DNA from: Phallusia mammillata
Lineage: Eukaryota
Length of the DNA stretch: 64,000 nucleotides
Assembly: GCA_965637545.1 (NCBI GenBank)
Contig: OZ281495.1
Span: forward strand, 25,110,001-25,174,000
Reading direction: 5' to 3'
Each line of letters opens with the position of its first letter. Position 1 is the first letter of the stretch. The position numbers and the translations under genes were made by a program. Below the pieces are notes generated by a model. The model was not told the origin of the DNA. It ran no database searches and was given only the letters and a program-made list of their open reading frames with translations. Shown in pieces: positions 25,925-49,700 of the stretch.

Positions 25925-26471
25925 TCTGACCGAAACTGAATGTTTCGTTATGTTCAAAAAATGGCCATCACTTTACGTTTCAACAAAGTCACCATTCTAC
26001 ACCTTTAGAAAGCTTGAGTTGCGCAGGTTTGATTACATGCTTACAATTTGCAAAAAAGGCAATTTCTAATCTGGCAAAAACAAATTAAGCGTTTTCATGA
26101 TCAGTTAGAAATATACGCTATTAAATGAACAACAAATTGAACTCTTGGACGCTACTGTGGCGTACAGCTGCAGGAAGCTCAAAGACCTACAGATTAGCTC
26201 ACGAAATAAAACAAAATGACCAGGAAGAAGTTTACATGGGGTTGAACGTAAACCGACCATAAGACCAGAACTGTACTAGCAGTCAGTCAGTGATTGTACA
26301 ACACAGATTTCAACGTAATAAGTAATACTATTATGTTTTTTGCGATTACTTTGTTGAAATCTGTTGCGTGAACAATTCCAATCAGAAAAACATTTCTTCG
26401 TCGAAATCACTACCGCCCTCTCCCGACAAGCTGCTACTTGCGTAACCAACCCAGGTTCTGACAGGTTGTTG

Positions 26472-28498
26472 CTAACCTCTTGGATTTCTCGCTCCACCGT
26501 ATTGTCCTTTGTGGCCGGTGAAATGATACAGGTTTTTAAAGGTCATGTTTTCTTTTTTATTGTTCTGGCTTCGCTGTTTGTGGGCTTTGGTGATTTTGCG
26601 AATACCCAAGGAAAAGAGCTCAATAATATTAAGGAGTACCATCACTGAACTGATGCCTGAAACGAGATCAATTAAAGGATCGCAAAACTAACAAACAACG
26701 AAAAAAACAGTGATACAATTTTACTTGAACAAGATTGTGCCTAATTAAGTGACGCACTTAGAACATGTCGGTCTCCACCAGTGTTTTTTTAAGGTGTTCC
26801 CCAAATTTCTCCAGCGGTTTCCCAAAATTTGGACTTGCAACTACAACTACAGTTTTTGGTATTTAAATGAAACACTTGCGGTCTCTTAAAACTACTTAGC
26901 GGTCACCCAAACCAAACCTTAAAAAAACCTGGTCTCCACAATGCCAAAAAAACTATATATCGAGGTCGTTTAAACTCACCGAAAATTACCCAGATCATCA
27001 TTGTCTTTTCCTTTGGCCTCGGAACGGTGCAATTGACCACGTTGGGGCAAGGCCATCTAGCGCATTTGAAAAGTTCCGGCACCCAGAATTTAAACACGTA
27101 AATATTGAATTGCAAGACCATAAATCCAATCTCTATCACAAGCCGCACAAACACCTAAAAGTGAAATGCCAGGCTGCAGTACTCTTTTTAAAAGGTTTTA
27201 CACAGGTTAAATCAAATAAAAAGTTTTTTTTGAGAAGGCAAGTTAATGTTTTCCCATGAAGTTGGTGCAAAAAGGCTGTCAGCGTTTACCTGCGCAACAT
27301 ATGCAAGACATATATGTGACGTAGTGTCCGAGTTTAATTTGGTCGGAAAAACTTTGTCTTCTTCCTTGTCTCTGTCAGCAACCTACGTGAAGAAAACAAG
27401 TTGCAAATGTTGGCAGCAAAACTGCATAACGTCCCCGTTTGCAGCTGAACAGTCGTTTACTGCTGCAAATAGTATTTACACCATTATCGCAAATATTATT
27501 CCTCCTGCTTCTATTTGTCCTAAATTTGGGTACAATGTACAGGCTTGTTTACTGTGGTTAAACACAAACACATCTTTATGAAAAGCTAAAGCATTGGTTA
27601 TAGGTAATGAAACTGCACATATTTATTTAAAGTAAATACAACCTAAAGTTTCTTACCATTTCGTCCACAAAAATCGGTGCATCTTCCAAATTGACATGTT
27701 CTAAACAAAGATAAGTTTGCAATTTTAATACACATACACAGTAAAAGAAGATTAAGATCCACGCCGGCTGTACACTGTTTAAATAGTAAACTACAAGTGT
27801 TGCCATTATTATCTGTAAGGCCAGTCCTAGTCTGACGTTTGCCATCAAAATTTGTACAGTCTCTTGCGTTATGCATAAAGCTAGCTTTATTCAATGTAAC
27901 AGAAAATGGATTTTTTGGCTGCACAACCCCATACTTCAATAACTAACAACCAAGTCCTCACCTGGCCTTCCACTTTCCTCTCTTTTTACAATGTCCTCCA
28001 TCGCCCTTTTCCTCATTACTTCCAGTTTCTTTTGTCGTTTCTTCTTTTTATGCTGCTCCTGCTGGCGCATTTTTTTGACCTGACTGATCTTGTGAGTCGA
28101 GTACACCATAAAAACTACGGTTGGCAATGAAACGGCCAAGCTCTGTTAAATTAGGTTGTTTTTGGACTTTTTATAACGAAGACCTTTAGCAGTAGGCAAG
28201 TAATAACAACCTAAACTAGTAAAAAAGAATTATTTTTTGCCACTACCAGTTTTTTTCATACCTGAAGCGCCCATAATCGACTTAAAGATATTGGACTAAA
28301 GTCGTTCAAACATATATTGGGACAACCTGGAGTCTGTGTGTTGCATTTGAAGGCTTGCTCGTCGCCAAATACAGTGCCAGCTATTAAAACTATCAGCAAG
28401 AGTCTCACAACAAAAAATAATCTGATCCACAACTTTCCAACCAATGTTGAGTGTTCGTAGCCTTGTTCCAGGTGCTTCTTTATGATATTACTGACCAT
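26472..28498 (-). CDS. Connexin copy 2 (tandem paralog), 6 coding exons, 304 aa, C-terminally truncated by an in-frame TAG
   Basis: Exons complement 28498-28262, 28142-27962, 27700-27657, 27382-27290, 27154-26980, 26656-26472; same intron positions as copy 1; six Cys kept. TAG at 26474-26472 replaces TAC(Tyr) of copy 1; the aligned frame continues to the ancestral TGA at 26384-26382. Confidence 0.88.
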
Positions 28499-28767
28499 CT
28501 TTACACTTTTTGTTAAAAATTTGTTAAAAATAGTGTGCAGAAACGGATCTGTTTAGATTTTAGAAGAACGATTCTTCAATAATTTTCTACTCAATCGTAA
28601 ATCTCGAAGCGACTTTGCATCTTTTTTTCTATTATGCAAGCAAAAAAACAACAACATAGATTTAAACCGTGTAATAACAAATGTGCAGCTAAAACAGAAA
28701 TGAAGAAACATTCATTATGTGCAATCTAACATTTCAATCTGCACATATAACAAAACAAAAGTTACTT

Positions 28768-31061: not shown

Positions 31062-31161
31062 ATGGATGGTGGACTTATTGCCCTCTTTGTTATTCTCGGG
31101 GTGCAGTTTGCAGTGGTTGCTGGCATGGTAACCTACCTGCTGTACCGCCGACAACCCAAAA
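31062..31161 (+). CDS. Gene A exon 1: single transmembrane signal-anchor
   Basis: [33 protein letters not shown] followed by a strong phase-1 donor A|gtaagt; in-frame TGA upstream of the ATG; the basic cluster continues in exon 2 (KKPKLK). Confidence 0.75.
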
Positions 31162-34100
31162 GTAAGTTGTGTTCGTTATTTATTTATTTTTTGTCGCAAT
31201 TTTTGAGTTGAATCATTAGTTAATTGATTTGTAAAAACTTTGTCTGTTTCTTTCGTGGTTGTACAAAAGTAGTGTTCAACAAACTGTTGAATATTTATAA
31301 AAAAAAAAATTAACGTTTTTAAATCAAAATAAGTGTTAAAACTCCACAATTTGTTTGGCTACATTAAACGCCAAGTGCACCTTGCCATATTAGGTTATGT
31401 GTGTTATTGTATGGTACCATGGTGACGCCTTTATAAAACGAGTTTTCAGTAAGTGCATCACTTAACGAAGATTTGCAATATAGTTGTGCTACGCGAAAAA
31501 CTTAGTTTAATCTTTTTTGAAGACGTTTATATTTTTTAAACATTGCCCTAAAATAGTAAATGCACCACGCTTTTCGCAAAACAAAAACTGGAGTGCCGTT
31601 GGATGGCTACACTAGCCAATACGGCCGATCTCTCGTCACCAGCTGCACTGATGAGACCTTGTAGGTCGAAACAGTGTGCACTGTCTGCAGCTTATCATTT
31701 ATTGGCTCTATGCTTCTACAAAAACTTTCACAAATTTATTTGTCATGAAAATTAGCATGCCAATATTAAAAATGTTGAACCCGGCGTGATTTTGAATGGC
31801 AGTGATAAAAGAAAATCATTTGTCACACGTTCAACCTAAGATACCCTTCACTTATTTCATTTGTTCGGCTCAAAGCATGTAATTTACTTCTGGCCATGCA
31901 AAAATCACCGCGTTTCAAGCAGCTTCAATAACAATACAAGTACGAATGATATCAACTGACAGAAATGCGCCTGGGGCAGCAAGATCATAAATGTCAGTTC
32001 CGATTTATTTACACTGATGACAACTACGGTTATTGCACTACCTCGACATAACGCCCTTAAGTATTAGAACATGTAATTTCACTACCCTCAAAATCAAATT
32101 AAAAGTAAACTTTTTTTGAATTTTGTCGGTTATAAGCATTTATCTGTAAAACATACATAGCAAACACAGGTGTTTTCATTACTTGTTTTACGTGTTAGCG
32201 CTAACCTAGAAAATCTTTTTTACGGAGGACTCGCTTATCAGTATTCGCGAAACAATAACTATTGGATGGGTTTAACAAATTTATATATTGTGCAGAAAAA
32301 CCCAAACTAAAACCGGACAACAATGTGATAACATCATACGAGGATCCGCATGACAGCAATGGCCACGTCCTCATTGATATCGATGTGAGTGAAAGGTTGT
32401 TTATCTTGTGGGGCCAAGGGTCACGGCTTTTTCCTGCTCTGGACATAGTTACAGTCTTGACCTGTCGTTTTGGTATCTCGAAAGAAAGTCTTTCGAACAT
32501 TTCTTAGTATATCAAGTACAAACGTTGCACAAATCAAAGCAGCCACGGCGATAGCGTACCAAATAGCTCGGGGATAAATAGAATTGGGAACTAGATATGT
32601 ATCATTTGTGTTAGCCACTCTAAGCGCTTCTTGGTATTTGAATGAATCATTGTTGGATAGAGTAAAGATGGATGGTTCGTTAGGTGTCGGGAGATATGTA
32701 TAGTAGTGGGTACATATTTCATGGTGGTGAAAGCTCTAATAAGAAATATACCATCCAGTATATTGAAAATAGAAAAACGGTTGTCAAAATACCATGTTTT
32801 ACACAAGTTTAAACTCGTGTCTGATTTTTTAAGTTCAAAAGTTGCTGAAATAAATGCCTTACGATTACTTGGTTACTTGGGATTGGTAAGGCGCCGTCAC
32901 ATTTAACAAAAGGCTATTTGGACATATTTAAATCTAAATTTTTCCCAAATACACATGCCAAAACTATTGCCTTAAATGTATATTTTCTACATTCCTATAC
33001 CACCGTATCTTGAAACCATGTCTTGTGTTTATTACCAGGAGAAGGATCCTAATGACATCCCTAGCTCTTCTACGTCATCATCACCAGGTAGGCGTAATGT
33101 TTCTCGAAATCAATATTTCAAAGTGCGTAAGTTGGAAGGCGGACCCCGCAATCGAGGAATAACCAACAATTCGACCCAGCTTGGCCTTCCCACAGACAAA
33201 AATGATTAGTATTTGTGCTGGGGGCTGATAACAAGTCTATGTAGGTTATTAGCGTCCTATGTTTTGACGCGGCGCGGCCACGACCCGTTATTATGTAATT
33301 AGCGAAAGTACTTCCCATCGACGTAATGAATTGTAATTCTGGACAGCCATGGTGGTTTTGCACAAAGAAGGGGAAATCTTCTGCATTAAGGGGAAACTAT
33401 TTTACGTAAAACTGAACAGGTGTTCTTTTTAATATATTTTGCATTTCTTTTTTTGAATTTCGAATCGCATAAGCGCAATAAACTTCACAAAGCCACAGAT
33501 AATGTTAGGCTAATTCTTGTATAGCACTACATCAACAAATTGTAATTTAACTGTATCGATATGATTTGCCCCGCAGACTCAAAATATCTGTTCACTTTTT
33601 ATAAGCGTTCCTTTTTTACAAACCTCTTTTTACATCAACATTTATGCTTGTAGCAATACAATTTTGCCCCAAAGCCAAAACACCCGCTACTGAGTATCTA
33701 TTTGCCAAAGCCAACCTGCGCTTACACGTAATGCGCTTAATACAGATCAGCATGGCGAAAACAAACCGTAAATTTTTTAAAGGATATTGTCTGCAGTTGA
33801 AGCGTAGGCGATTAACTTGATCATTGCTTTTAGCCCGTGAGCTATTTATCGCGATCGAATTGTTTCCGACGTCCGCAGTGATGATAAAGGAATTCCTGTT
33901 GTTATTATTTTAATATCAACTACCGCTTTTGTACAATTTATTTTGATCGTTTGGCAGTTACGGTTTTTCAGGTTCAAACGTTTTACATTTTACAAGTCAA
34001 AACTAAATGCCTTGATTCGGGTTTCTGCTTATTTAAGAGTTGCGCAAATAACTTGGGGCAATTATTGTTTGATAAAGATTAAACTGACCAAGAGCTTTAC

Positions 34101-37100
34101 CACATACTTTGATTGGGATTTAACACATTTCAATAAGAATTAACAAGCTCGTCAGTAGCAAACAATTTTACAACTTTCCACTTTACTTTTGAAGGGAGAA
34201 CAGGTTGATAAGGCATGCCGCACCATTTAAAAATACGTTTCAAAAGTTATGGGGCTATTCAACGCAAATAGTGATGTTCAACTTATTGTGTTTCACAATT
34301 ATTTCATTTATAATTGCATATGTGACATACGCTCGTTGCTATGCGGTCCAAGAACTGTGTCATTTCATCGCATCGTATCAATTTGTATCATAAATTCCAA
34401 TCACTGCAATTGATGGACCGTGTGCAACCGATCAGCCAAGTTCGTGCAAAACGCACTTTTCCTCCAGCTACGGCATTTGTACGCTTTGTAATGCACCAAC
34501 GAGCTTGCTTGTAACGCCCCAGGCTCGAATGCGGTTTTTATAAGAGTCCTGTGGTCGACTGAATGTAAACTTTCGAATGTTGTTGCAGATCCAAAGAAGA
34601 AACTGATCGATGAGGACGAAATTGTACCGTCGGCTCCTATGCCGGAAGAAGAGCACGCACCACCTTACACTGTTGTCGATGTTAGTTGTTGCTAATTAGC
34701 CAGCAGTAACAAATTTGATTTGAAACCAACCTACATATAAGTTTACATGAAAAATGTTTCTTGAAATAACAAACCTAACATGTGTTGATATCAATTAGAA
34801 ACATGTAATCATATACATCAATCCCAATTCTCTTAAATCGTAATACAAGAGACCACTCAAACTTTGGTAACAACCATTTACATACTTAAACAAAAATATG
34901 TGTAAAACATTTGATCAAACTTTGGCAGAATAGTGACACTAACGTGTTTAAAACTCTTGCTAATCAACTTCCAAAACCAGCAACAAAAAGATGTCATATG
35001 TATTTAGGTTGACGAAGACCCGGTGACTGTAGTAATAGTGTCGCCAAGCAAGGAAGCACCTCCTCTAGCTCCTTATACCGACCAAGATACTTTACCACGC
35101 ACGAAACCAGCAGAAGTATCCAGTTCTTCATCAAGCTCAAGTGAAGATGAAGTCCAAGAGGAACCGATACCAAAGATTGTTGCCCAACGACCAATAGATG
35201 ATCGCCAGCCTCCTTTTGAATCTTCATTATCATCTTCATCATCATCAGCATCTTCACCAGAGAGCGAGATTGATGAAGCTCCTCCAGTGATTGTTGTTCC
35301 TCCCCTTAAAGAGCCAATTCAAAGCAGCACCAGCTCGTCGTCCTCTTCAGAAGACGATGAGCCAGTACAACCAGTTTTGAAACCTTTAATCGAGGAGAAA
35401 ATTCCAACGTCTTCTTCGTCTTCTTCCGAGAGCGAAAGGGAAGCTCCAATTCAAAAAGTCCCCATTGCAAAAGAACGAAAGATAAAAAGATCCATAGCAG
35501 AGTCGACAACGTCTGAAGAGCTGGTGTCAGTCAAGAAGAGTTCAGATCACAGCTCATATGATGAGGAGATCGTTGTTTTGGAGGAGGGGACCGCAAGTGT
35601 GTCTTCTGGTGACGGCGACGCCGTGGTTGACAAGCAGAGAAGGAGAGTGCGCCGCAAAATCATTCGAAACAAGGAGATCATTGAGCTTATTGAAGAGGAG
35701 AACATCGTCATTAAGAAGCACAAAAAGGTGTCCAACGTCACACGAGAGGAGTCGAGTTCATCTTCGTCCACATCGTCGTCCGAGGAAGAGCAGAAGATAA
35801 AGAAGAAAAAGAAAAAGAAGAGGAAGGTGAAAAAGATTCAAGCGCCTCCCACGTCTTCAAGCTCGTCATCAGAGAGCTCAGAAGAGGAAGAAATAATAAT
35901 TACAACTACCCATAAGGAAGTCCAAGCTACCCAGACAAGACCCCTTTCATCTTCTTCGACTGTATCTCTGCCTGATGCAGGAACAAGGGAAATTGCTACT
36001 TCTACCGACATTCCACAGGAGTTGGTCAGCGACGGAAAATCGTTTTCAAGCGAGTACTATTATGACGTCACCAACCAAGAGCATGGACGTCACATCACCA
36101 CGACGATTATCGAGAGGACCACGTCACCGAACCGCGACGTCACAAAGCACCACGTTGTTCGTGAACTAGTGAAAGATGACGTCGTTGTTCGTGAACTCGT
36201 GAAAGAAGACGTTCATACAAGTTGGTCATTCGTGGTTTATTTGCTCGAAGGTATGTTTACTTATTGTTTGTGTTTACAGCAACAACAGCCACGGCAATGA
36301 CTACATCAGAATCAGAAGATGAGGCCAAAATGCATCATGTCGCCATCGGTGTCCAAACAGGTGACATATATTTGTCTTTGATTATAGTTTTTACAATACA
36401 CTTGTTTGCGATTTTGCTTATTTTGTTCTTCTTTGGCAGACAAAATGTCATCAAGCTCTTCATCGTCATCTTCTGAAGATGAGATTTCCGAAACAAGGGT
36501 AATAATTTATCATAAGGTTTTTATAAAAGAAAATCATGTTTTACTTTCTTAGCACAAACTAAGTGAAAACACACAACCTTTGTTGCGAGCTTTTTCTATC
36601 TTGCATCCCCAGGTTGACGGTCAGACGCAAACTCACTCGGTAACAATGATGGCGAAGGACTTTGACAAGAAAGTTGAAATAGAACAAGATAAGAAATACA
36701 CGTCCTCTGTAACTGCCATTGTAACTAAGGAACGAGTTGTAGAACCGGAGGAAAGGCGGTAAGCATTAAAATATTATATAATTTGGATCAATTGGTTTCT
36801 TGAACGTTTTTTTCCAGGTAGTAATGATTTTTTTCTGAATATTAATTCTACAATAATTTCGATACCTGTTGTCAATTATTATCTTGATAATCTTTAACCA
36901 ATATTTTAAGCAGAAAATCTCGCGCCGATATTCGATTTACATCAGGCTGGAACCGACAGGTGACCTTGGATAACCTCTACCAAGCCGGTATCGTGACGGA
37001 GACTACAGTGACAGAACTGGAAACAGGTTTGTTGAAATTTAACATACACATCTAACTACTACATGATCACTCAACATTAGCAAAAGTAGAAAATGGCTCT

Positions 37101-40100
37101 CACCGGAAGTAAAGTGATGGAAGTTTAAGTCCTTAACTTTTTGTGTTGATTGTTGCAACAGGGAAAATTTCGGAAGCAGATGTTGAGAAGTCACTTCAGT
37201 TGTATTTGGTCGGCAACGAACCTATTGCTGGGCTTATAATGGAAGGCACTGGAGAGAAGATTTCCATATTTGACGCTTATAAGATGGGTCTTATCAGACG
37301 AGGTAATTGCAAGGTCTACTTATGTCTGAACTCTGAAGCAATAAACTTATAATGAGAAAGTCCCACAGGTAGATTTTAATTGGTTAAAATATGATCGGTA
37401 TTCGATAATTTGCTTTCAGGTACTTCAATCAGCTTGTTGGAAGCACAAGCTGCAACAGGTCGCATTATCGACCCTAGAAATGCAAATCGAATGTCGGTAA
37501 AAGAAGCGTCGGAAAATAAAATCATTGACCGACAGTTTGAGGCAGTTCTAACAAGGTAACACATGTTACATTCATAGAGTAAACAAAAGAGTAAATAGAA
37601 AAAATACTTTAGCAGACAGACATGTGGCTAAATTACGTAAGCTACTTAGTGAACAAAATTCCATTAAACCTACTTTTTCTTAGAGCTGAACGGGCAGTGA
37701 TAGGATACAGGGCTCGAAGAGGAGACGAAATGTTGTCGTTGTTTCAAGCAATGAACAATGGTCAAGTGGTGGAAAACCACGGAATTAGGTTACTAGAGGC
37801 GCAAATAGCCACTGGTGGTGAGTTTTTTGCGTTACAAAAGTGTATGTTGCTGGTGACAAAACCCATACAAACATGTTTTGTTTTTCAGGAATCGTTGATC
37901 CAAAGGCCAACCATCGTCTACCGGTGGAGGTCGCCTTTGAGCGTGGTCTTTTCGATGAAAGGCTGCATAATATTCTGGAAGATCCATCGGATGATACAAG
38001 AGGATTCTTTGACCCCAACACAGGGGAAAATCTTACTTATCAAGAACTGATGGAAAGGTTATTACCAAGAGTGTTACAGTGACTTTACAAACTTTTAAAA
38101 ATTCCAAAATTGTTTTTGACCAGACATTTTCTAACTTTGATAAAAGTGCTGTTACCAAAAATGATTACTTGAAACCTTGCATTCAGATGCATTATCGATG
38201 AAGATACAGGGCTGAGGTTGCTTCCGTTTAAGGCGAAACCCGCTGAAAAAGTTGCCGAACCATCTGAGGAAGTTGTTACAACGAGTGAGGCCCAAGTTGT
38301 ACAACAAGGTGATTTTCGATTTACTTTATGCTTTGGGAAATCTTTGTGCATTTACCATTTTTGCTGGACGTGAAAAAATGGTGTGTTACTCAATTTTTAT
38401 TTTTTTTAAAAAGAACCTAGAAGGACATCATCAGATTCGGATAAGGACAAACGCTATGTATCAGAGGTAATCTTCATGTTTTGTTTCATTGTTCATAAAT
38501 AATTCAAAGATTGTTCCCTATGTTGTGCTTGTCTATTGTTAAACAAATCATCCCCAAAGCCTTTTGTACAATAATCGACATAATTTAAAATAGATTTATA
38601 AAAACTTGTGTTGACTAATATGACATTACCTTTTAGATTTCACAAGATATCAAAAAAGAACAAGAATTGTCAACTACCGTAGTAACCACTGAAGAGATGA
38701 TTGTAACAACTACTAGCCAAGAAAAGCGAAGGTTTGTGTCGATAAAACGTGTCATAGCAAAAGAATGTGTTCGTAATTTAATATTCTTGCAGAAAATCGA
38801 GGAGAGACATTCACTTTATGTCGGGTTGGAATAGGCAAGTTACATTGGAAGATCTATACCAAGCTGGTGTAGTCACTGAGTCCACGATCGAAAAACTTGA
38901 AGGAGGTAAAGTCACAAATTCAAACTGACCACACAAACTTGTCATATATTGAAAGGCAAGCAATTTTTCGAACAGGTGAAATTGAACAGTCTGAGGTCGA
39001 AAAATCATTGGAACAATACTTGGTGGGAGCCGAACCTATTGCTGGGCTGCTTATGTCCGATACAGGAGATAAGATTTCCATTTATGATGCTTGGAAACAG
39101 GGACTTATTAGAAGAGGTGGATAGCCCTATTGAGTCTTTTTTTATATTTACAAACTACAAAATGCTTTCTACTTAACTGAATAGCTGTATAATTCTTTTA
39201 TAGTATCGACAAAATGTAACTATTTTAACAGGAACATCCATCAGTTTACTTGAAGCACAAGCAGCCACTGGTCGCATTATTGATCCTAAGACCGCTAATA
39301 GAATGTCTGTTCATGATGCATCCGAAAGTGGAGTAATTGACAGGCAGTTTGAGGCTGTGTTGACCAGGTATGTACTACAGGCAACTTGTTACCTTGGTCG
39401 GTGGTTAACAACAATTGCTGTGTTTCATTTTGCAGAGCTGAGCGGGCTGTGATTGGATACAGAGCACGCGGTGGAAACGAAACTCTGTCTTTATTCGAGG
39501 CGATGAATCGTGGACTGGTAGTCGAAAATCATGGAATTAGATTACTAGAAGCACAGATAGCTACTGGAGGTACGAATAAAATTACTAAAGCTATCCAAGT
39601 ATAATTTTGGCACCGTTATGTCACTATTTTTTTCATTTTGATGTCTAGGAATTGTGGATCCAAAAGCGAATCACCGTTTGCCGGTAGAGGTCGCCTTTGA
39701 GCGAGGTTTGTTTGACGAGAGGCTGCATGAGATTCTTGAGGATCCGTCGGACGATACAAGAGGATTCTTCGACCCGAACACAGAAGAAAATCTTACCTAT
39801 CTTGAACTAATGGAAAGGTGATCCACTTTGTAACGTCCTTAACGTTAGCTAAGGGCATAAAAATAGACTGACCATTTGTTTTACATAAAAAGTGTGACTG
39901 GTAAGCTGGCCTGTAATGGAGGCCCGAAACCCGGATCGAACATAAAAAATTGGATGAAAAAGTGTTAAGTATTAAATTTACCAGGTTGAAGTTACAACAT
40001 CAATGTGGCTTAGTGTAAAATCACGTCCAAATCAAGCCTTAGCCCGACCTGAAAAGCTGTGGTCCAATTTACAACTTCGATTAAAACACTACAGGCCATT

Positions 40101-43100
40101 AGAAATTAAAAGTTAAATGCACTGATTTTGTGTTATGTGATTTTTGTTACTACTGTGACAGTGACACAAGGTCTTAAATTGCTTTGCAGGTGTGTGATTG
40201 ACCAGGACACAGGCTTAAGGTTGCTCCCATTCCGAGTCAAAACTGCTGAAAAAGTTACAAAAGCTTCTGAAGAAGTTGTTACGACAAGTGCTGCTCATGT
40301 TGTGCAACAAGGTAAGATTGTGGCTTCGGACATGCAATTTCAAGTGATACTGGCAGGCAAACATCATCGTGTTTAAGCAGTACATAAACATGGGATGAAA
40401 TGTAAATGATTTTTTTATTATAGAGCCACGGACTAGAACTTCATCTTCGTCTTCATCATCTTCTGACGAAGGAAAAATGGTCGTGTCAGAGGTCAGTGCA
40501 ATAAACAAGTTTTACTTCAACGTTTGGAGGATCTAATAATACTTCGTCTGACAAAAGCGTTTTTTTTGTGAGCATTGCTGTCTAGAACAAAGTAACAAAA
40601 TCTGTACAAACTTTGATACTCCATGAGTCAAACAAAATTGAAATTGAAACGCCTATATTGCTATACCTTTGTTCCAAAAGTTTTATATCTTGCCTCAGAT
40701 GTACAACATGAATCCAACTTAAGATTAATACGTATTGTATTCAATCACGATGTAGATTTCGGAAGAGACCAAGAAAGAACAGGATTCATCGACAACTACT
40801 GTCACCATGGAAGAAGTGATTGTTACCACAACAACACACGAAAAACGAAGGTTGTTTCTGAGACAATTTCGTCAAACATTTTGGTACCATTTCTTTTAAC
40901 TATTGTGTATTACAGGAAATCGCGGAAAGATATCAAGTTTTTGTCAGGTTGGAAGAGGCAAGTGACCATAGATGACCTCCTCAAAGCTGGTGTCGTCACT
41001 GAATCAACAATCGAAAAACTGGAAGAAGGTAGGTTTCGGGTCAAAAGTCAAAAAACATTCTTTGTTGAAACAAATCTTATGCACCACATTTTATAGGTGA
41101 AATTGAACAGTCAGTGGTTGAGAAATCGTTGGAACAATACTTGGTTGGAGCTGAACCGATTGCTGGACTGCTTATGTCCGATACTGGGGACAAAATTTCA
41201 ATTTATGATGCCTGGAAACAAGGATTGATTAGAAGAGGTTAATAGACCAAATCTCTAATCATTATTAGAATTTTTACGGTATCGGATAAAAATGAAAATG
41301 TCGTGAACCTTTTTTGCCTTTATGAAACTACCTTCACAGAACATTTTGTCCAGCTTTATGTACCACGTAAAATACCTTTATTTTTTTGTTTATACAGGAA
41401 CCTCGATTAGTTTGCTGGAAGCACAAGCTGCGACCGGTCGTATAATTGACCCACAAACGGCTGAGAGAATGTCAGTCGAGGAAGCTTCGCAAAAACGCGT
41501 TATCGACCGACAGTTTGAGGCTGTACTGACCCGGTAAGTTTCGCCCGTAAACGACATGAGTCAATATTTTTTCTCAAAGACAAGTTTGGTTGCAGGGCTG
41601 AGAGGGCTGTGTACGGATATAAGACTCGTTTGAGTAAGGAACCTCTGTCACTGTTTGCTGCGATGAAACGAGGATTGGTAGTTGAAAATCATGGAATACG
41701 ACTCCTTGAAGCTCAGATTGCTACTGGAGGTATAGTGTTACAGTTCAGCTGGGGCGAGGAAAGCCTTTTCTGATTGAATAATAAACTATTACTAATGATA
41801 TATACCGACGGCGTTAAACACCCTTTCCAACGATCGTTGTGCAGTTTCAGCAACATATTTTGCATTTTCAAATCTGTTTTTCGTATTCCAATATCGGGAA
41901 CTTCTGTGCGGTGCAACGTCACTAAATGTGTTTTACAGTTGACTGAGATCATAAATTTGATTTTTTTGAAAACGTTGCCAATAAATCTTTGTCCCTTTCA
42001 TGTAGGAATTATTGATCCTAACGCCAACCATCGTCTGCCGGTAGAGGTCGCCTTTGAGCGGGGTCTGTTTGATGAAAGGTTGCATAATGTTCTGGAAGAT
42101 CCTTCAGACGACACGAGAGGATTCTTTGACCCGAACACAGAGGAAAATCTGACCTATCTCGAATTGATGGAAAGGTAGTGCACTAAACTTTTAACCTCAA
42201 AAACAGTTTTGGTGGTTGATTTATAATTGTGTCGAGATATGTTGCTATTGTATGCATATATTTAACCATTAATTTGTTTGTTTGTTTTCAGATGTGTGGT
42301 GGACAAGGACACCGGGTTAAGGCTGTTACCCTTCCGTGTAACACGCTCAAGGGCAGCATTGAAACATTCAAAGGTAACGTATTATGTTTCTTCTTTCCAC
42401 ACTAACACAGCCTACTCTTAATAAAATACTACCTCAACTTTAAAATTTCACACAGGTGGTCTTTGAATCAGCCACAAAGCGTCAGGTGCTGCTTGCTGAT
42501 CTTCTCGCAGCCGATCTTCTGGATAGCAACACTGCTCAGAAGTATGACGAGGGGCTGATGACAACTGATGAGGTGATAGACATGGTCGCCCATCTTAAAG
42601 TTTACGTGGATGGGACGATGCCTATTGCTGGTATCATAAGCTCGACTACAGGTATTGTTTACGTTTTGTTCAAAAGGTTTGCAATGCAAATTCAAGCTGA
42701 TTGTTCCGGTCATAGAGTATAAAAGTTAATTATCCACGCTGTAAACAAACTAGATTAGACCTAAGAAATTATGATTCGTAGCCGGTAGTAAACAACACCC
42801 TCTAAGTACTTTTGCCTGCATTAAACCTTGGTGGTTGCACAGTATGGAGGCCTAATGGCCAATATTTGTAAGGCTCGTAAAGACATACAATTAACAATAT
42901 CGAATGTTTGCATTAAATGTCTAGGTGAAAAGATGAGCATTGTTGAAGCAAGTCGCGCTGGTCTCATTCGCAAAGGCACCGCGTTCGAACTTCTTGAAGC
43001 ACAGGCGGCTTGTGGAAAGATCATGGATGTACAGTCAGGCAAATCGGTCTCCCTGGAAACCGCGATACGCATAGGCGTGATTGACAGGTAAAATACGTCA

Positions 43101-46100
43101 ATTTTCGCACTTTTATACTTATTCAAAATCCTCTATTATTTTGGCAGTGAATTTGAAGACGTTGTGTCACGTGCTCATCGAGCCGTAACCGGGTACCGAG
43201 AACCTTTCAAGCGTGAAGTGTTGTCTCTATGTGACGCTATGGCGCGACATCTTGTGGTGGAAAGACATGCAATTAGGTTTGTCACATTTAATTGACAAAT
43301 ATGCCAAAACTGATCTTCAACAATGTCAATCCTTTTGATTTTCGTCAGACTGTTGGAGGCACAAATCGCCACTGGAGGCATAGTCGACATCAAGAGTCCT
43401 GTTCGCATTAGCGTCCAGGTGGCGCTAAAGAGAGGTATGATTGATTCCGGTCTGGCAAAGAAAATGGAGAAACGCGAAACAACGAGCTATTTTGATCCCA
43501 TGACTGGAGAGAATCTGAACTATTCGGAACTGATGGGAAGGTATTCCTAAATATTCTCTGTAAAGCTTATGAGCAGACTAACCTGTGTTTTGCCTCAAAT
43601 CACAGTTGCATTCAATGGTTGTGCACTACCTTGTTGTATAACGTTTTATCACTTGCGAAATAGATGTGTTCTGGACAAGGACACCAATCTACTGTTCTTA
43701 ATGACCGAAGGAGGAACCGTAACGCAGAACGTGCGACCATTCGAACCAGAACCTGATACGAAGAAGATTCGGGAAAAGGCACAAGCCAAGCTCACTACAG
43801 AGGTTTGGATACTCATGTAGCCAAGCAGGAGTTTTTTGTGAGCAACAATCAACTAAAAGTAAACGATCATTTTAGGTGGTAGAAACAAAGAAGAGAAAGA
43901 AGCGAAGGTCAAGAAAGGGAGAGCCGCCAGCAGGTTAGTTAGTTGGGCAATGAAATATGGATTTTTTTACAGATAAATTACAGATTATCTTTTATTTGAT
44001 TTTTGTCTCAATTACGTTATTCAGTACGCCTTTGGCAACAGTTTATGTATCCTTGTACATATTTGATACTTTATTTGGGCGATGAGTATGGTTTTTAAAT
44101 GATTTTAAATGAAGTTTTTTGTGATTTTTATCGCAATCACGTTGTTGAGCTTATGTGTAGTACTCCTGGTGGCAACAGTTTATGCATCCTTGTACATATT
44201 TGATACTTTATTTGGGCGATGAGTATGGTTTTTAAATGATTTTAAATGAAGTTTTTTGTGATTTTTATCGCAATCACGTTGTTGAGCTTATGTGTAGTAC
44301 TCCTGGTGGCAACAGTTTATGTATCTTTGTACATATTTGACACTTTATTTTGTGGGTTGGTTTTTCCAGCATTAGCAGTGGCTTCCACATCCTCGACTTC
44401 TCCTCCTCCAACGGCGATCCCGAGTAGTCCTCCAGCGATCCTCAGCCGGAGGGTGGTGATCGTGGATCCGAACACGGGCAACGAGATGACAGTGCAGGAA
44501 GCTCTCAAGTTCAAGCTCATTGACGAGGAAACTGCCAAGCAGCTGATCGCACAGGAGGGCGACTTCGAGGAAGAGAGTTAGTTGCATTACGTGACCGCCT
44601 GTTACAGTTCATGCTTGATTAGATTTGTATTCCACGCTTGTAGTATTTCTTGCCTTTGTTTGTAAAGACTTTTGCTTCTTTGTGCACACTGCATGCTTCA
44701 CTTTTCATGTACCCCCGCTTTTCAACCTGACAGTTCCTGTTCGCGTAGAATTGACAACTTCTTTTGTAATTGTTATTTGACTGACACGCTGCACTTTTCT
44801 TGTACGCTATTCATCGTGTATTCGTGCCCCGTAGAGAAACTCACAAATAACAAACGCATATGACGAAGAAATACTTTGTTGTAAGACGATAAATAGCCAG
44901 TAAATCAATTGCGAGAATTCTTGCTGTTAATTTAATGACAAAAACTCAAGGAATGTCAACGAGAAAAAGCATCACTGCGTATTACAAGTCTGATGAAGTG
45001 GTGTTTGTATGTAGTTGTACATATCCCAAACTGCCTTTACAGTTAAACAGATATTCAACTGGAAAAGTTGGCACGTCGTTACGATTCAATACACACTAAT
45101 AGTCGTAGTTTGGTTCAACGGTGCATGGCGGATAATTGGGCAACACATTTTCACTTTGAAAAAGGTCTTGGCACTGCACTTTTAAAGTCTGTAGGAACCA
45201 CGAGAATTCGAAACAATCACATTTGAGCACAAATGGTAAGAAATGAGCCTATTTATGCACTGTCAATATATTCTTCAGTGCCAAGTGTACGTGACTAATT
45301 TTGACTGTTCATGGGGAATTTCTCAGAGGACTGGGCGGCGTTTGAACTTTACCAAACTGGATTGACCTTTGATAAAGTCGTACGTAGGCAGTCAGGCGAA
45401 TCCTCTATATCAGACACAGTGATTCGCGTTCTACTACGACAAAGGTGCGTGTTATTTATAAATTTGTTCAACATGTGAAGGTGTGGATTGAGGATAGATA
45501 TCAATTTCCGTTGATTTTCATTTCTGGCGCCAACTCTATCAAACATTATGGAAAATTTAAGCACTTCTCCCGGCTTTCCACACATATTGCATCTATTTTT
45601 ATAATGCCAAGCCTGGTAGGACTATACGTACCAAATTTTAACTGCACGAAAAACACCAACTTAACTTGTCTTTTATATGAGGTGTAATAAACTTTGTGAA
45701 TGATTCAGAGCAAAAAAAGTCTCCGATTATGTACAACGATAGGGTGTACATTTTTCAGTGATAATAAAGAGCAGTTTATGGGAAACGGACTGGAAGTTGG
45801 GACTTATTGTTCAAGGAGAATGGAGAGGTGAACTTTTCAAAAGTTTTTTTTAGAACCAAAATCAAAGGCTGGTTACTATTTCTATTTATTAGCTGCGTCA
45901 TCGACAATGGTTCTCAGCAGATGATGGTTCAATGGGAATCAGAAAAGGACGGCCTTGTAGGTGTACAGCATAGTTCCACAACGGTATTGGAAACAACTAA
46001 AGTTCATCATGTCACCTCCAAGGTAGCTTTCTTCCACTTTTCTGCCATATTCGACACAACAAATTACGCCCCTTTAAACTTCACATTTTAATGTCAACAG

Positions 46101-46343
46101 ATTGTAAAAACCACTACCATAACGGAGGTCGAAAGTGCAACGGATACGTCTGAAGGTATACGCAGTATAACTTGCAGTTGTAATTTATGTTATTTCATTA
46201 TTTGATTTTTAGTGATTGTTCAATCTTTTTCTGCTATTTTTCTTCCTCCAGATAACCTAAGTGACTCGACGGACACAGAAATGAAGATTGTTCTCACCAA
46301 AAACATTATCGTCGTACGCGATGACGAAAGCAATGAGTACTAA
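31062..46343 (+). CDS. Gene A: membrane-anchored plakin-repeat (plectin/epiplakin-like) protein, about 41 exons, about 2,007 aa: N-terminal TM anchor, Ser/Glu/Pro-rich disordered region, 4 B-type PRDs, IF-binding linker, Thr/Ser-rich tail
   Basis: Phase-consistent GT-AG chain: 31062-31161, 32296-32384, 33039-33087, 34589-34680, 35008-36220, 36280-36360, 36440-36498, 36613-36758, PRD1 module 36914-38731, PRD2 module 38793-40850, PRD3 40916-42373, PRD4 42456-43802, 43876-43933, 44370-44576, (45327-45444 tentative), 45893-46022, 46101-46155, 46252-46343 (6024 nt). PRD motifs [51 protein letters not shown]; linker [22 protein letters not shown] identity is secure; attachment of the 5' TM exons is inferred from splice phase. 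Confidence 0.8.
31641..31692 (+). ncRNA. Type I hammerhead ribozyme motif, sense strand of gene A intron 1
   Basis: Stem I AGCTGCA(31641-47)/TGCAGCT(31686-92); core CTGATGA 31648-54; stem II GACC-ttgta-GGTC; GAAA 31668-71; stem III ACAGT-gtgc-ACTGT; GTC cleavage triplet ending at C31685. All core nucleotides present. Sits at the end of an about 110-bp repeat unit (31587-31696). Confidence 0.82.
36914..42373 (+). repeat. Triplicated multi-exon PRD module within gene A
   Basis: Modules start at 36914, 38793 and 40916. The first five exons are identical in size in all three (113, 141, 136, 134, 169 nt); modules 1 and 2 continue with 122, 53/68 and 95 nt, module 3 ends in an 82-nt exon. Protein sequence is highly similar; introns show no obvious similarity by eye. 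Confidence 0.9.
44034..44350 (+). repeat. 137-bp intronic tandem repeat, about 2.3 copies
   Basis: GGCAACAGTTTATG recurs at 44034, 44171 and 44308. Confidence 0.92.
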
Positions 46344-46796: not shown

Positions 46797-49700
46797 ATGA
46801 GATGGCCGCAAGATTTGGTGTTATTGCTTCAAGTGGGAATCGTAAACGCTTTAAGACCGACAGAAATTATTGTGATTAACGTATTCGGAAGTTTGGGTGG
46901 TATTTCACTAATTCTGATCGTAGCTCTTGTATGCAGCTATACGATTCAAAGTAAGTGTTTTTGTTTTTAAAGTTGTATCTGTATAACATCAAATTGTATC
47001 TTGTGAATAATCAAACGTTAGTGTTCCAAAACAAAAACAAATGAAAAAATTATTCATATCTTTTTAAAAAGGGTTATTTGTAAAACATTTTAAGTCCGGT
47101 GTTTTAATACGATCGGTTTAAAAAGATTTTAAAATTACTTCGTGTATTGTATTTCGGAGGAGAGAAACTTGTCAAAAGCTGAACCATTTTAGATTAGTAG
47201 TTACCTACTCACCAACCCTAGACCGCACCTTGGGGCTTTCACATTCGACAAAGCGTGGTATCATTCTATTAAAAGATAAGTTTGCGACAACTTTTGTGTA
47301 GTAGCTTGACAACCCTGTCACATTATTAAACCAATCCTGTAGCAACTATGCGATACAAAAGCACTTTACCGTCAAATTACGCAACAAAAACGGTTGTCTA
47401 AAATTGTGCAAATTTTATTTTGTCGTTTACAGAATGTAAAGATGGGCGTAGACGTGGTGAAAACGCTTTAACAGAGGTGGTTTCGGACGGCCGAAGACCA
47501 TACACTAGCACGGTATGTTTGTGTTGTTGGTCTGTGTACCTTCACGAGGGTTTGTTTTTGACAGCTGGTTTTCTCAGTCTAACCCACTCACAAAAGTTTC
47601 GTCATAGACATTCGTGCTTCATATTAAAGCTGCCTTGCAGTTCGTGTATTATCTGCGGAAAGTACCGGGGATAAATCTGAAAACCTTACAGATTCTTGTA
47701 CATACGTCATTTGCAGTTTACATGTGATTTTCAACTTTAAATTAAAATATAAACTTGGGCACATATTGGTAAAACGTTTTTGGCAGTGCACTCTGTTTCA
47801 ACCTATAAGGTCTTATCAGTGCAGCTAGTGACGCGAGATCGGCCGTATTGGCTAGCGTAAACTACCAAGACCCAACTGGAGTGCCATTGGATTGCCTCAC
47901 TAGCCAATACGTCCGATCTTCCGTCATCAGCTGCATTGATAAGACCTTACAGGTCAAAATGCAGCTTATCTTGGTGTTTTTACGTTTTGGCATACTTTGC
48001 ACAAAACTAATGCAGCCAATTTCGATTTGATGTATAATTTAATATTTCATTGCCATACAACACAAGCTTTCTAAATAGCTCTAGGTTTTCACTGAGTATT
48101 GTTTACCTGTTGTGTGAAACATAAACAAAATACTTTTCAAAGCTAAAGAATGTCGGTGCTGGGGAGGAAACATCTCTGGCGACCGTGTCATCACTTTCCG
48201 AAGATGCTGCAAATTCGAAATTACAACAAGAAAACGCTCCAAACCACCAACCAGTTTCGAAATCTCACGAATCGTCGCGCAGTCAAACCCCTGACATTGC
48301 TGACAACTATTCAAAAGATGATACACTGGTTTTTGAAGAGGAAAATACCAGCGAGGTACAACAAAATCTGAGTGAATGTATTTTGTACTACAAAAGTTGA
48401 CCACATTCCAAAATCAATCCAAATCACTATTGATGCCCCCAGTAACATTTTTGCGCGTTGTAAAAATCACGATAAAAACTGAGTAAAGGTTTCTGTACTG
48501 TATGTCCCCCTCAATTTGGCCACACTTCAAACAATCCTAATCACTCTCGGTGCCACAAGTGGAATTTTTCTGCTTTTTTCGTAATGAACATCTTTGCTCA
48601 TTTTTTTGAATGTTTTTCTAAACATTTATCTACAGCACACTTTACTTTTTTGTTCTGATTAAAACATGTCAACATTCAAATTAATGCAACATCACTTTAG
48701 TGTACGTGTAAATTGAAAAGTTAAATATTTGAAAGAACAAAAACAATCTAATTAGTTTGCTCGTTTATCTTTAAAAACTATCCAATCTAAAACAATGTTA
48801 ACATCCCATATAAAACACGTTTACAAGTGACTAAACTGGTGTACTGTAATTGTTTGCAGGGAACGGAGAATGGTAAATGTAATCACTACGAGAGACCCGA
48901 TGATACATTGCTAGAGAAAGAGCACGTGCAAAATGAACGAGTACAAAATAATGAGCAGCAGATACTCTCTGTGTCTCCGCTTTTCAGCAGCGATGTTACC
49001 AACTTGCAACTTGAACACGAAAAAGCGCTGCAAACAGCTCCCCAATCCAATGGTACACCGCCTAAAGCCCGAAACAACCTTCACCACTCTGCGGATCTTA
49101 ACTTAAACCTAGTCGACAGTGATACAGACTCTAGTGATGAGGAAGATTTTACACAGAACATACCCCAAGAGGTACCTAATTTTTTTAAGATAATTTCTTG
49201 CGGTGTAGCTGCAGCGCGTCATAAAGTCATGATCAACCAATTATGCCATCTAGTATTTTGCGCTCTATAACTTTCAACGTTGCGCAACTTTCCGGCTAGG
49301 TGATTGTTCCGTGCCATTGTGACGCTATATGTGCTTTCACCAAGCAAAATAAACTCAACTCAACTCAATTCAACAACTAGAAATACATAGCATGATAGCA
49401 CACCTTTACAATGTTATACTGGGTGTATAATTAATTTTAGTTTTAGCATGCTGGTCCAGTAAAAAACGCCCGCTAAAAACAGTAACACTTCGTGAAAGTG
49501 ACGAAAAATAGTTTTTAACTCTTTTGCGCCGAACGGTGACGACTATTTTAAATCTACATTTATTCTAATTGCAGACCAATAACCTACAACAGCTACAAGA
49601 TTCCTTGGTATTGGAAAATCTGCACTATAAAGATCCCGAGGTTGGTTGTTTAAAACACGATTTTGTCTCTTATCTAAATCCTGTTTGCAAGGATAACATT

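What the first reader, a model, noticed from the sequence alone, without database searches (positions are those of the whole stretch)
31062..46343. Plakin-repeat protein that appears to carry its own membrane anchor instead of the actin-binding, plakin and rod domains
Seen: the first exon encodes one hydrophobic helix followed by RRQPKKKPKLK (positive-inside, so the C-terminus is predicted cytoplasmic), and a phase-consistent exon chain joins it through a Ser/Glu-rich spacer to four PRDs and the plectin/desmoplakin linker. No CH, spectrin-repeat or coiled-coil exons were seen upstream. Established: PRDs plus this linker are the intermediate-filament-binding end of plectin and desmoplakin, which reach membranes indirectly via integrin beta4 or desmosomal cadherin-armadillo complexes. 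Inference: this protein could tether intermediate filaments directly to a membrane, a one-component desmosome/hemidesmosome-like anchor. I know of no described protein with this architecture but cannot search.
Basis: partly seen in the sequence, partly recalled or inferred. Interest (0 to 1): 0.92.

Follow-up and report, generated by a model that had tools for sequence, protein, structure and literature searches.

The report
Membrane-anchored plakin-repeat protein of tunicates
This tunicate gene encodes a single-pass membrane protein whose long cytoplasmic tail carries four plakin repeat domains (the module that binds intermediate filaments), and it belongs to a conserved tunicate family, apparently undescribed, that may tie the filament skeleton directly to a membrane.

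Summary
Confirmed, with corrections. RNA contigs from three runs splice the TM exon (31062-31161) through three small exons and a 1.2-kb Ser/Glu-rich exon to the first PRD exon. Contig lengths fit my exon model through all four PRDs. No upstream exon was seen: contigs start 5-7 nt before the ATG, an in-frame TGA precedes it, and connexin genes lie upstream on the other strand. Words of 45893-46343 are absent from RNA and the Ciona ortholog ends just after the linker-like module. The CDS most likely stops at 44579-81 (37 exons, 1877 aa), with only the first half of the plakin linker. The architecture is not unique. Predicted proteins of Ciona, Styela, Clavelina, Phallusia and Oikopleura ('plectin-like', 'desmoplakin-like') have an N-terminal TM (or signal peptide plus TM) and 1-3 B-type PRDs, most behind an acidic spacer. 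Tunicate PRDs form one clade. I found no paper describing this. Plectin 1b and dystonin-a2 are known self-anchored plakins. With a ~4-residue ectodomain the protein cannot itself be an adhesion receptor. Best reading: a direct membrane-to-IF tether, membrane unknown. The scan's other notes on it come from this same window.

The parts
31062..31161 (+). Exon 1: start codon, 4-residue N-terminus, TM helix (aa 5-28), start of the basic flank
   Evidence: Sequence; hydropathy; RNA contigs start at 31055/31057 and join 31161>32296; in-frame TGA at 31050-52
32296..34680 (+). Exons 2-4 (32296-32384, 33039-33087, 34589-34680): basic juxtamembrane flank and start of the spacer
   Evidence: GT..AG joints in X1, X3 and X9 contigs; juxtamembrane region is 42% identical to P0041 over 103 aa, E 2e-17
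35008..36758 (+). Exons 5-8 (35008-36220, 36280-36360, 36440-36498, 36613-36758): Ser/Glu/Lys-rich spacer, predicted disordered. With exons 2-4 it forms aa 29-609.
   Evidence: Joints; composition S 17%, E 12%, net charge -33; no Pfam family; no homolog in 1.8 billion representatives; the equivalent region of P0041 has pLDDT below 50
36914..38308 (+). PRD1 (exons 9-14; aa 610-856), B-type
   Evidence: First exon joined by RNA; Pfam PF00681; HMM domain
38414..38731 (+). Inter-PRD spacer exons 15-16
   Evidence: Phase-consistent GT-AG model; colinear with exons 23-24
38793..40311 (+). PRD2 (exons 17-22; aa 931-1177)
   Evidence: HMM domain; 82% aa identity to PRD1
40424..40850 (+). Inter-PRD spacer exons 23-24
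   Evidence: Model
40916..42373 (+). PRD3 (exons 25-30; aa 1257-1503)
   Evidence: HMM domain; 87% identical to PRD2; dN/dS 0.063
42456..43802 (+). PRD4 (exons 31-35; aa 1510-1757), divergent B-type
43876..43933 (+). Exon 36: basic cluster ([10 protein letters not shown])
   Evidence: Phase-consistent splice model; colinear with the KAKRKKK cluster of the Ciona ortholog
44370..44581 (+). Exon 37: Ser/Pro stretch, first PR-like module of the plakin linker, probable stop TAG at 44579-81
   Evidence: Pfam PF00681 E 1e-8; periplakin linker 4Q28 aligns over 44 residues; tail is 51% identical to the Ciona ortholog, E 3e-32.
44582..44865 (+). Probable 3' UTR (inferred only)
   Evidence: The X1 contig has 4003 nt after 36999: 3714 nt of exons to 44576 plus 289 nt. 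An AATAAC hexamer lies about 20 nt before 44865.
45327..46343 (+). None is supported as part of this transcript.
   Evidence: RNA runs hold 0.00 of the sampled words of 45893-46343; only the DNA-like runs X7 and X8 hold them. Exon 45327-45444 was not tested.

Best explanation
Gene A (CDS 31062-44581, 37 exons, about 1877 aa) encodes a single-pass membrane protein with no cleavable signal peptide. A TM helix at aa 5-28 with a strongly basic C-terminal flank should insert N-out/C-in (a type III signal anchor). That leaves about 4 residues outside and about 1850 residues in the cytoplasm. The cytoplasmic part is a ~580-residue disordered Ser/Glu-rich tether, then four desmoplakin-PRD-B-type plakin repeat domains, a basic cluster and the first half of a plakin linker.

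Inferred function: the PRDs and basic tail bind the acidic rod of cytoplasmic intermediate filaments. The protein would then tie filaments directly to the membrane holding its anchor, with four PRDs giving avidity and the long spacer acting as a flexible leash. The anchor's high hydrophobicity, and paralogs with a signal peptide plus TM, point to the secretory pathway (ER to plasma membrane) rather than mitochondria.

The gene is the local member, expanded from two to four PRDs, of a tunicate-wide family of TM-anchored PRD proteins.

Shown: transcript structure up to PRD1, domain content, family conservation, purifying selection. Inferred: topology, membrane identity, IF binding, exact 3' end.
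For: - Splice chain: seen in RNA contigs of three runs.
- Anchor: it is the only hydrophobic segment. Mean KD of aa 5-27 is 2.42, against 1.49 for plectin 1b (PMC2426950). The C-flank carries +6 charge.
- Topology across the family: the charge difference favours C-in in 17 of 18 members.
- PRDs: Pfam. The intronless PRD of the neighbouring paralog (gene B), 58-62% identical to PRD1-3, matches desmoplakin PRD-B with E 8e-61. The AF2 model of the gene-A-type relative P0041 shows helix 3-31, a disordered 36-294 and a PRD with pLDDT above 90. That PRD superposes on 1LM7 with TM 0.95 and rmsd 1.5 A.
- Groove residues: three of envoplakin's six basic groove residues (R1876, K1901, R1952 equivalents) are kept in PRD1-3, the same three as in desmoplakin PRD-B (PMC4782060).
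- Tail: a basic cluster precedes the linker module. A basic cluster is essential for plectin-vimentin binding (PMC2121005).
- Orthologs and paralogs with the same layout: Ciona XP_026689825.1, XP_002120044.1, XP_018670703.1, XP_078482518.1; Oikopleura CBY34044.1; Styela XP_039253948.1; Clavelina XP_076815583.1, XP_076805687.1, XP_076800506.1; Phallusia CAB3240033.1.
- An independent complete mRNA (L001) has stop codons in frame before its TM-encoding start.
- Tunicate PRDs form one clade, support 96/94.
- dN/dS between PRD2 and PRD3 is 0.063.
- Ciona has cytoplasmic IF genes (Karabinos 2004, as cited in PMC5603733).
Against: - No localisation, topology or binding data exist.
- B-type PRDs have only moderately basic grooves (PMC4782060), and each PRD here is net acidic.
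- From memory, in plectin and desmoplakin the strongest IF binding needs linker plus PRD-C. Here there is no PRD-C and only half a linker.
- The anchor layout (aa 5-28, basic C-flank) is the same as that of the mitochondrial anchor of plectin 1b, so an organelle target is not excluded.
- Exons after 36999 and the 3' end rest on prediction, contig-length arithmetic and orthology, not on observed joints.
- Some annotated tunicate relatives (P0023, P0170, P0174, P0175) show no TM. These may be isoforms or incomplete gene models.
Confidence: 0.6

Rival explanations
1. Organelle tether. The N-terminal segment is a mitochondrial outer-membrane (or other organelle) signal anchor, as in plectin 1b, and the protein couples that organelle to intermediate filaments rather than to the cell surface.
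For: Plectin 1b has a TM at aa 5-27 with a positively charged C-flank and sits in the outer mitochondrial membrane (PMC2426950). Gene A has a TM at aa 5-28 and a +6 flank. Dystonin-a2 uses an N-terminal TM for ER and perinuclear membranes (PMC3279385).
Against: Mitochondrial signal anchors have moderate hydrophobicity (1.49 for plectin 1b). Gene A's is 2.42. Paralogous family members carry a cleavable-looking signal peptide followed by a TM (gene B, gene C, P0059, P0062, P0064, P0067, P0173), which implies the ER/secretory route.
Confidence: 0.15
2. Membrane-anchored scaffold whose PRDs bind something other than cytoplasmic intermediate filaments, or bind them only weakly. The PRDs would then serve as a generic protein-interaction platform under the membrane.
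For: Only 3 of 6 (PRD1-3) or 2 of 6 (PRD4) groove basic residues are kept, and the PRDs are net acidic. PMC4782060 notes that PRD-A and PRD-B grooves are less basic and may have other functions.
Against: The retained residues are the same as in desmoplakin PRD-B. From memory, that domain co-sediments with vimentin. The basic cluster plus linker module at the C-terminus is conserved in Ciona. No non-IF ligand of a PRD is established.
Confidence: 0.15
3. The hydrophobic N-terminus is a cleaved signal peptide, and the PRD protein is secreted or luminal.
For: A small-residue pattern (V-A-G) occurs at aa 19-21, which a signal-peptide predictor might score.
Against: The hydrophobic stretch is 24-26 residues long, with no basic n-region (the N-terminus is M-D-G-G), and is followed by seven K/R in eleven residues. 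PRDs are cytoplasmic in every known protein. The spacer is rich in acidic and Ser runs and contains an NLS-like poly-Lys. The same C-in prediction holds across the family.
Confidence: 0.03
4. The TM exon belongs to a separate short gene, or the PRD exons are normally driven from upstream plakin/rod exons outside the window.
For: None found. Only short-read contigs were available.
Against: Single contigs of 5.9 and 5.4 kb join the TM exon to the PRD exons in X1 and X3. X9 shows the same joints. No loose end or joint enters exon 1 from upstream. An in-frame stop lies 12 nt before the ATG. Opposite-strand connexin genes lie upstream. Orthologs in Ciona and Oikopleura start with the same kind of TM.
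Confidence: 0.02

Closest known systems
Plectin isoform 1b
   Same: A plakin with its own N-terminal signal anchor (TM aa 5-27, positive C-flank) and C-terminal PRDs. It was shown to link a membrane (mitochondrial outer membrane) to intermediate filaments (PMC2426950).
   Different: Plectin 1b keeps the actin-binding domain, plakin domain, coiled-coil rod, six PRDs and a full linker. Its anchor is only moderately hydrophobic (1.49 against 2.42 here). Gene A has a disordered spacer in place of all these domains, and its membrane is unknown.
Dystonin-a2 (BPAG1-a2)
   Same: An isoform-specific N-terminal TM domain places a plakin-family cytolinker on ER and perinuclear membranes (PMC3279385).
   Different: It is a giant spectraplakin whose 'a' isoforms have (from memory) no PRDs. 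It links to actin and microtubules, not to IFs through PRDs.
Epiplakin
   Same: A plakin made of B-type PRDs without actin-binding, plakin or rod domains.
   Different: Epiplakin is soluble, with no TM and no long acidic spacer, and (from memory) has 13 or more PRDs encoded in one exon. No ortholog was found in Ciona (PMC8782857). Tunicate PRDs form a clade separate from vertebrate epiplakin/plectin PRDs.
Desmoplakin C-terminus (PRD-B) and periplakin linker
   Same: The paralogous gene B PRD matches desmoplakin PRD-B at E 8e-61, and gene A's PRD4 exon also matches it best. The model of relative P0041 superposes on it with TM 0.95. Exon 37 aligns with the first module of the periplakin linker, including the Q-E-x-D-[WF]-E-E end.
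   Different: Desmoplakin reaches the membrane through plakoglobin, plakophilin and cadherins via its plakin domain. Gene A has no PRD-A, no PRD-C and no second linker module in the supported CDS.
Predicted tunicate proteins named 'plectin-like' or 'desmoplakin-like' (e.g. Ciona intestinalis XP_026689825.1, XP_002120044.1; Oikopleura CBY34044.1)
   Same: Same layout: N-terminal TM, 1-3 B-type PRDs and, in the gene-A-type Ciona ortholog and in XP_002120044.1, a basic cluster plus half-linker at the C-terminus, with an acidic or Ser-rich spacer in most (measured for 10 members). PRD4 and tail are 65% and 51% identical to XP_026689825.1.
   Different: These carry automatic annotations only. The ortholog has two PRDs where gene A has four (PRD1-3 come from tandem duplication). 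One Ciona family member was mentioned as a marker of contractile papilla cells, without its architecture being noted (PMC7397655).

Membership tests
Plakin family (PRD-bearing cytolinkers) | At least one plakin repeat domain (about 4.5 plectin repeats, PF00681) with the PRD fold | tested here: met
   Four domains. PDB sequence matches to desmoplakin PRD-B. The AF2 model of relative P0041 superposes on 1LM7 with TM 0.95.
Plakin family (PRD-bearing cytolinkers) | N-terminal plakin domain (spectrin repeats plus SH3), actin-binding CH domains or a coiled-coil rod. These are present in all members except epiplakin. | tested here: not met
   The transcript starts at the TM exon. Exon 5 has no Pfam family. 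Upstream ORFs are connexins or have no family.
Plakin family (PRD-bearing cytolinkers) | Basic groove residues shown to bind vimentin in envoplakin (R1876, R1895, K1901, R1914, R1952, K1994) | tested here: inconclusive
   3 of 6 are kept in PRD1-3 and 2 of 6 in PRD4, the same pattern as desmoplakin PRD-B (PMC4782060).
Plakin family (PRD-bearing cytolinkers) | Binding to intermediate filaments | not testable with these tools
   Needs co-sedimentation or co-localisation experiments.
Epiplakin | Soluble protein made only of many PRDs, encoded by one large exon, restricted to gnathostomes | tested here: not met
   TM plus a 580-aa spacer and 37 exons. Tunicate PRDs form a clade apart from vertebrate epiplakin/plectin PRDs. 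No EPPK1 in Ciona (PMC8782857).
Signal-anchored plakin isoform of the plectin 1b type | N-terminal TM within the first ~30 residues with a net positive C-terminal flank | tested here: met
   TM at aa 5-28, flank net +6.
Signal-anchored plakin isoform of the plectin 1b type | Moderate TM hydrophobicity (about 1.5) and mitochondrial outer-membrane location | tested here: not met
   Mean KD is 2.42 for aa 5-27, against 1.491 in PMC2426950. Location itself is not testable here.
Type III (N-out/C-in) signal-anchor membrane protein | No cleavable signal peptide, very short N-terminal segment, one TM, and a positive charge excess on the C-terminal side | tested here: met
   By sequence only. SignalP, DeepTMHMM and experimental topology mapping were not available.
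Tunicate TM-anchored PRD family (grouping proposed here) | N-terminal TM (or signal peptide plus TM), a disordered acidic/Ser-rich spacer, and B-type PRD(s) of the tunicate clade | tested here: met
   Gene-A-type orthology: N-terminus 42% identical to P0041 (E 2e-17), PRD4 65% and tail 51% identical to Ciona XP_026689825.1.
Plakin linker (periplakin 4Q28 type, two PR-like modules) | First module ending in Q-E-C-D-W-E-E | tested here: met
   Exon 37 residues 24-67 align with chain residues 11-54, domain E 0.008, colinear. The module is conserved in Ciona.
Plakin linker (periplakin 4Q28 type, two PR-like modules) | Second module | tested here: inconclusive
   A weakly similar candidate exon (45327-45444) exists. 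But the ortholog ends about 18 residues after the first module, downstream exons are absent from RNA, and the contig length fits a stop at 44579-81.

The most novel reading that the evidence does not exclude
From memory, tunicates lack desmosomal cadherins and desmoplakin. They may anchor cytoplasmic intermediate filaments to the plasma membrane with a dedicated, expanded family of single-pass TM-PRD proteins. At least four anchor types were seen, at least four genes exist in Ciona, and three genes lie in tandem here. This would be a one-polypeptide IF-membrane tether that bypasses armadillo and integrin adaptors. It could be either the ancestral chordate solution or a tunicate invention by exon shuffling of a TM first exon onto PRD exons.
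Probability: 0.35. Interest if true: 0.8.

Novelty: new variant of a known kind. Interest (0 to 1): 0.6.

Why it matters
- Known plakins reach membranes through adaptor complexes or, in two isoforms (plectin 1b, dystonin-a2), through an N-terminal TM bolted onto a giant multi-domain protein.
- This family is stripped to anchor, leash and IF-binding module. It is conserved from appendicularians to ascidians and under strong purifying selection.
- If it binds IFs, it is the simplest known membrane-IF linker.
- It offers a tractable system in Ciona for asking how filaments are attached to membranes in the sister group of vertebrates.
- It gives a natural minimal design for testing what PRD-B modules and the half-linker can do on their own.
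- It corrects database names ('plectin-like', 'desmoplakin-like') that hide the membrane anchor.

Tried and rejected
I rejected it after (no RNA words for 45893-46343), the ortholog's end and the contig arithmetic.
- An alternative that the X1 contig runs on into the intron after 43802 was rejected. That path has 106 repeated 31-mers from 44049 on, which a k=31 assembly should not cross.
- A search of 1.8 billion representatives with the spacer exon gave 0 hits, not even itself. The spacer is fast-evolving or low-complexity.
- A search with the P0041 N-terminal 120 residues gave only itself.
- ESM Atlas look-alikes of P0061 all scored 0.66 or below, so there was no lead.
- A PPxY motif suspected in exon 4 was not found.
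- The stronger-looking donor at 36251 is not used; RNA uses 36220.
- Literature searches: 'plakin repeat' with 'ascidian' gave 0 papers, and 'desmoplakin-like' with 'Ciona' gave 0 papers. Broader searches gave only passing mentions.
- Rfam on intron 1 gave nothing at gathering score.
- The read laying cap (one call) prevented checking joints after 36999 and in gene B.
Full report
**The transcript**

I laid Logan contigs of four RNA-type runs on window:31000-36999.
- One 5925-nt contig (X1) and one 5371-nt contig (X3) begin at 31055 and 31057. Shorter X9 contigs carry the same joints.
- The joined blocks are 31161|32296-32384|33039-33087|34589-34680|35008-36220|36280-36360|36440-36498|36613-36758|36914 onward. 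Every skipped piece is GT..AG.
- X1 and X3 come from one study and X9 from another.
- So the hydrophobic first exon is spliced to the Ser/Glu-rich exon and to the first PRD exon in one RNA.
- No joint or loose end enters exon 1 from upstream. TGA lies in frame at 31050-52.
- The upstream region carries two connexin genes on the minus strand (PF00029) and nothing resembling CH or spectrin repeats.
- If the mRNA is trans-spliced, as many tunicate mRNAs are (from memory), that would add no coding sequence.

**Gene model**

I chained phase-consistent GT-AG exons, guided by the three near-identical PRD units.
- The CDS units share no 31-mers, so contig lengths can be used as a ruler.
- The X3 contig has 3451 nt after 36999. 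My exon sum to the end of PRD4 (43802) is 3449 nt. The 2 extra letters (GT) are common to the intron and to exon 36, so this looks like an assembly branch point. An intron-retaining isoform may therefore exist.
- The X1 contig has 4003 nt after 36999. This equals exons up to 44576 (3714 nt) plus 289 nt of read-through. The alternative path through the intron after 43802 contains repeated 31-mers from 44049.
- RNA runs that hold 90% of the exon-5 words hold none of the words of 45893-46343.
- The Ciona intestinalis ortholog XP_026689825.1 (P0139) aligns colinearly with my exons 35-37 (51% identity, E 3e-32). It ends about 18 residues after the same ...EGDFEE motif.

I therefore place the stop at TAG 44579-81, giving 37 exons and 1877 aa. 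Exons between 37000 and 44581 are predicted and length-checked, not seen as joints.

**The protein**
- Residues 5-28 are the only hydrophobic segment (best 19-residue KD window 2.63; mean 2.42 for aa 5-27).
- M-D-G-G precedes it and RRQPKKKPKLK follows it.
- Residues 29-609 are Ser 17%, Glu 12%, net charge -33, with no Pfam family and no detectable homolog.
- Four PRDs follow at 610-856, 931-1177, 1257-1503 and 1510-1757. PRD1-3 are 77-87% identical to each other and 47-49% identical to PRD4.
- PRD2 against PRD3 gives dN/dS 0.063 with dS 1.35. The duplication is old and the copies are under strong constraint.
- The intronless PRD of neighbouring gene B (58-62% identical to PRD1-3) matches desmoplakin PRD-B at E 8e-61. 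The PRD4 exon also matches PRD-B best.
- Mapping envoplakin's six vimentin-binding groove residues (PMC4782060) through the 4QMD alignment shows the equivalents of R1876, K1901 and R1952 kept in PRD1-3, and K1901 and R1952 kept in PRD4. This is the desmoplakin PRD-B pattern, which that paper calls moderately basic.
- After PRD4 come a basic cluster (exon 36) and a module that aligns with the first half of the periplakin linker (4Q28). A basic cluster is essential for plectin-vimentin binding (PMC2121005).

**Family**

A search with gene B's last exon and with P0041, followed by hydropathy scans, shows that the layout is common in tunicates.
- Gene-A-type anchors occur in P0041, Ciona XP_026689825.1 (N-terminus M-E-G-G-L-I-A...) and, probably, Oikopleura CBY34044.1 (TM plus three PRDs, the last 58% identical to PRD4). 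P0041 is a complete metatranscriptome mRNA with stop codons before its ATG; its N-terminus is 42% identical to gene A over 103 aa.
- Other anchor types are as follows:
  - An N-terminal TM followed by juxtamembrane Cys and Lys/Arg: Ciona XP_078482518.1, Styela XP_039253948.1, Clavelina XP_076815583.1.
  - A longer N-terminal hydrophobic region: Ciona XP_018670703.1, Phallusia CAB3240033.1, Clavelina XP_076805687.1.
  - A signal peptide plus TM: P0059, P0062, P0064, P0067, Clavelina XP_076800506.1, and genes B and C of this window.
- In 17 of 18 members the charge difference across the TM favours a cytoplasmic C-terminus.
- In a maximum-likelihood tree of 127 PRDs, the tunicate domains form one clade (support 96/94). 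It lies apart from the main vertebrate epiplakin/plectin-type clade (99/98), inside which gene-A-type, gene-B-type and the other types are separate starred groups. PRD4 sits just outside on a long branch. Two second-domain rows from Ciona savignyi fragments fall in a different PRD clade.
- AlphaFold2 on P0041 with a 31-sequence alignment gives a confident helix at 3-31, a region at 36-294 with pLDDT below 50, and a PRD with pLDDT above 90. The PRD superposes on desmoplakin PRD-B (1LM7_A: TM 0.95, rmsd 1.5 A).
- Some relatives (P0023, P0170, P0174, P0175) show no TM. I cannot tell isoforms from incomplete models.

**Mechanism**

The best-supported reading is a type III signal-anchor protein. 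About 4 residues lie outside and the whole PRD array lies in the cytoplasm on a flexible leash (roughly 200 nm if fully extended; my estimate). It would bind the acidic rods of intermediate filaments multivalently.
- The secretory-pathway assignment rests on two points. The anchor is far more hydrophobic than plectin 1b's mitochondrial anchor (2.42 against 1.49; PMC2426950). Paralogs carry signal peptides.
- A mitochondrial or other organelle target remains possible.
- Because there is essentially no ectodomain, the protein cannot be a self-sufficient desmosome- or hemidesmosome-like adhesion unit. At the cell surface it would need a partner for adhesion.
- IF binding is inferred from homology alone. 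The absence of a PRD-C and of the second linker module, and the net acidity of the PRDs, are real cautions.

**Comparison and novelty**
- Self-anchored plakins are known: plectin 1b (PMC2426950) and dystonin-a2 (PMC3279385). PRD-only plakins are also known (epiplakin), although no epiplakin ortholog was found in Ciona (PMC8782857).
- The combination here is a TM anchor, a disordered spacer and PRDs with nothing else. In public data it exists only as automatically named predictions.
- I found no paper that describes it. One paper lists a Ciona 'plectin/desmoplakin/epiplakin ortholog' as enriched in contractile papilla cells, without noting any architecture (PMC7397655).
- The paper library covers open-access papers and preprints only.
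- I rate it a new variant of a known kind. The sequences are not new, but the recognition of a conserved family of minimal membrane-anchored plakins appears to be.

Noticed in passing
window 18200-21300 and 26200-28500, minus strand: Two connexin genes (PF00029, E 1e-18 to 2e-33 on four ORFs). The nearer one lies head-to-head with gene A, about 2.5 kb from its ATG. From memory, connexins are restricted to chordates, which fits a tunicate origin of the window.
   Followed up: partly
window 31586-31725 (intron 1 of gene A): RNA word depth is about 770-820 in X1/X3, against 14-52 for the exons. Many contigs run off into unrelated sequence on both sides, and nearly all copies show G>A at 31661. 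This is a dispersed, highly transcribed repeat. Another note calls it a hammerhead ribozyme, but Rfam gave no family at gathering score for 31200-32290.
   Followed up: partly
window 46797-51098 (gene B) and 52955-53120 onward (gene C): These are two tandem paralogs. Their first exons encode a signal-peptide-like segment plus a TM, and their 5' regions are 77% identical at nucleotide level. The first exons of genes A, B and C all end in phase 1 at ...AAA A|GTAAGT just after the TM. Gene B ends in an intronless acidic spacer plus PRD exon (49998-51098; PF00681, E 3e-37). No RNA joints were checked for B or C.
   Followed up: partly
window 57100-63700: Near-identical ~1.8-kb cassettes repeat at least three times (for example ORFs at 57882, 59703, 61526 and 63349). 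They encode acidic segments resembling gene B's spacer exons at 48185-48400 and 48827-49270. They probably belong to gene C and run off the window.
   Followed up: no
window 43954-44340 (intron before exon 37): Three tandem copies of a ~137-bp unit, each giving a spurious hydrophobic ORF ([15 protein letters not shown]...). The last copy runs into the acceptor of exon 37. The copies share exact 31-mers.
   Followed up: partly
window 43802-43820: The X3 RNA contig stops 2 nt past the exon 35 donor, where the spliced and unspliced paths diverge. An intron-retaining isoform would end ...LTTEVWILM* at TAG 43818-20 and lack the basic cluster and linker module.
   Followed up: no
window 45327-45444: An open, splice-flanked segment contains ...[14 protein letters not shown]..., which weakly resembles the second module of the periplakin linker (...VIHDRKSGKKFSIEEA...). 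It could be a relic or an alternative exon. It was not tested against RNA.
   Followed up: no
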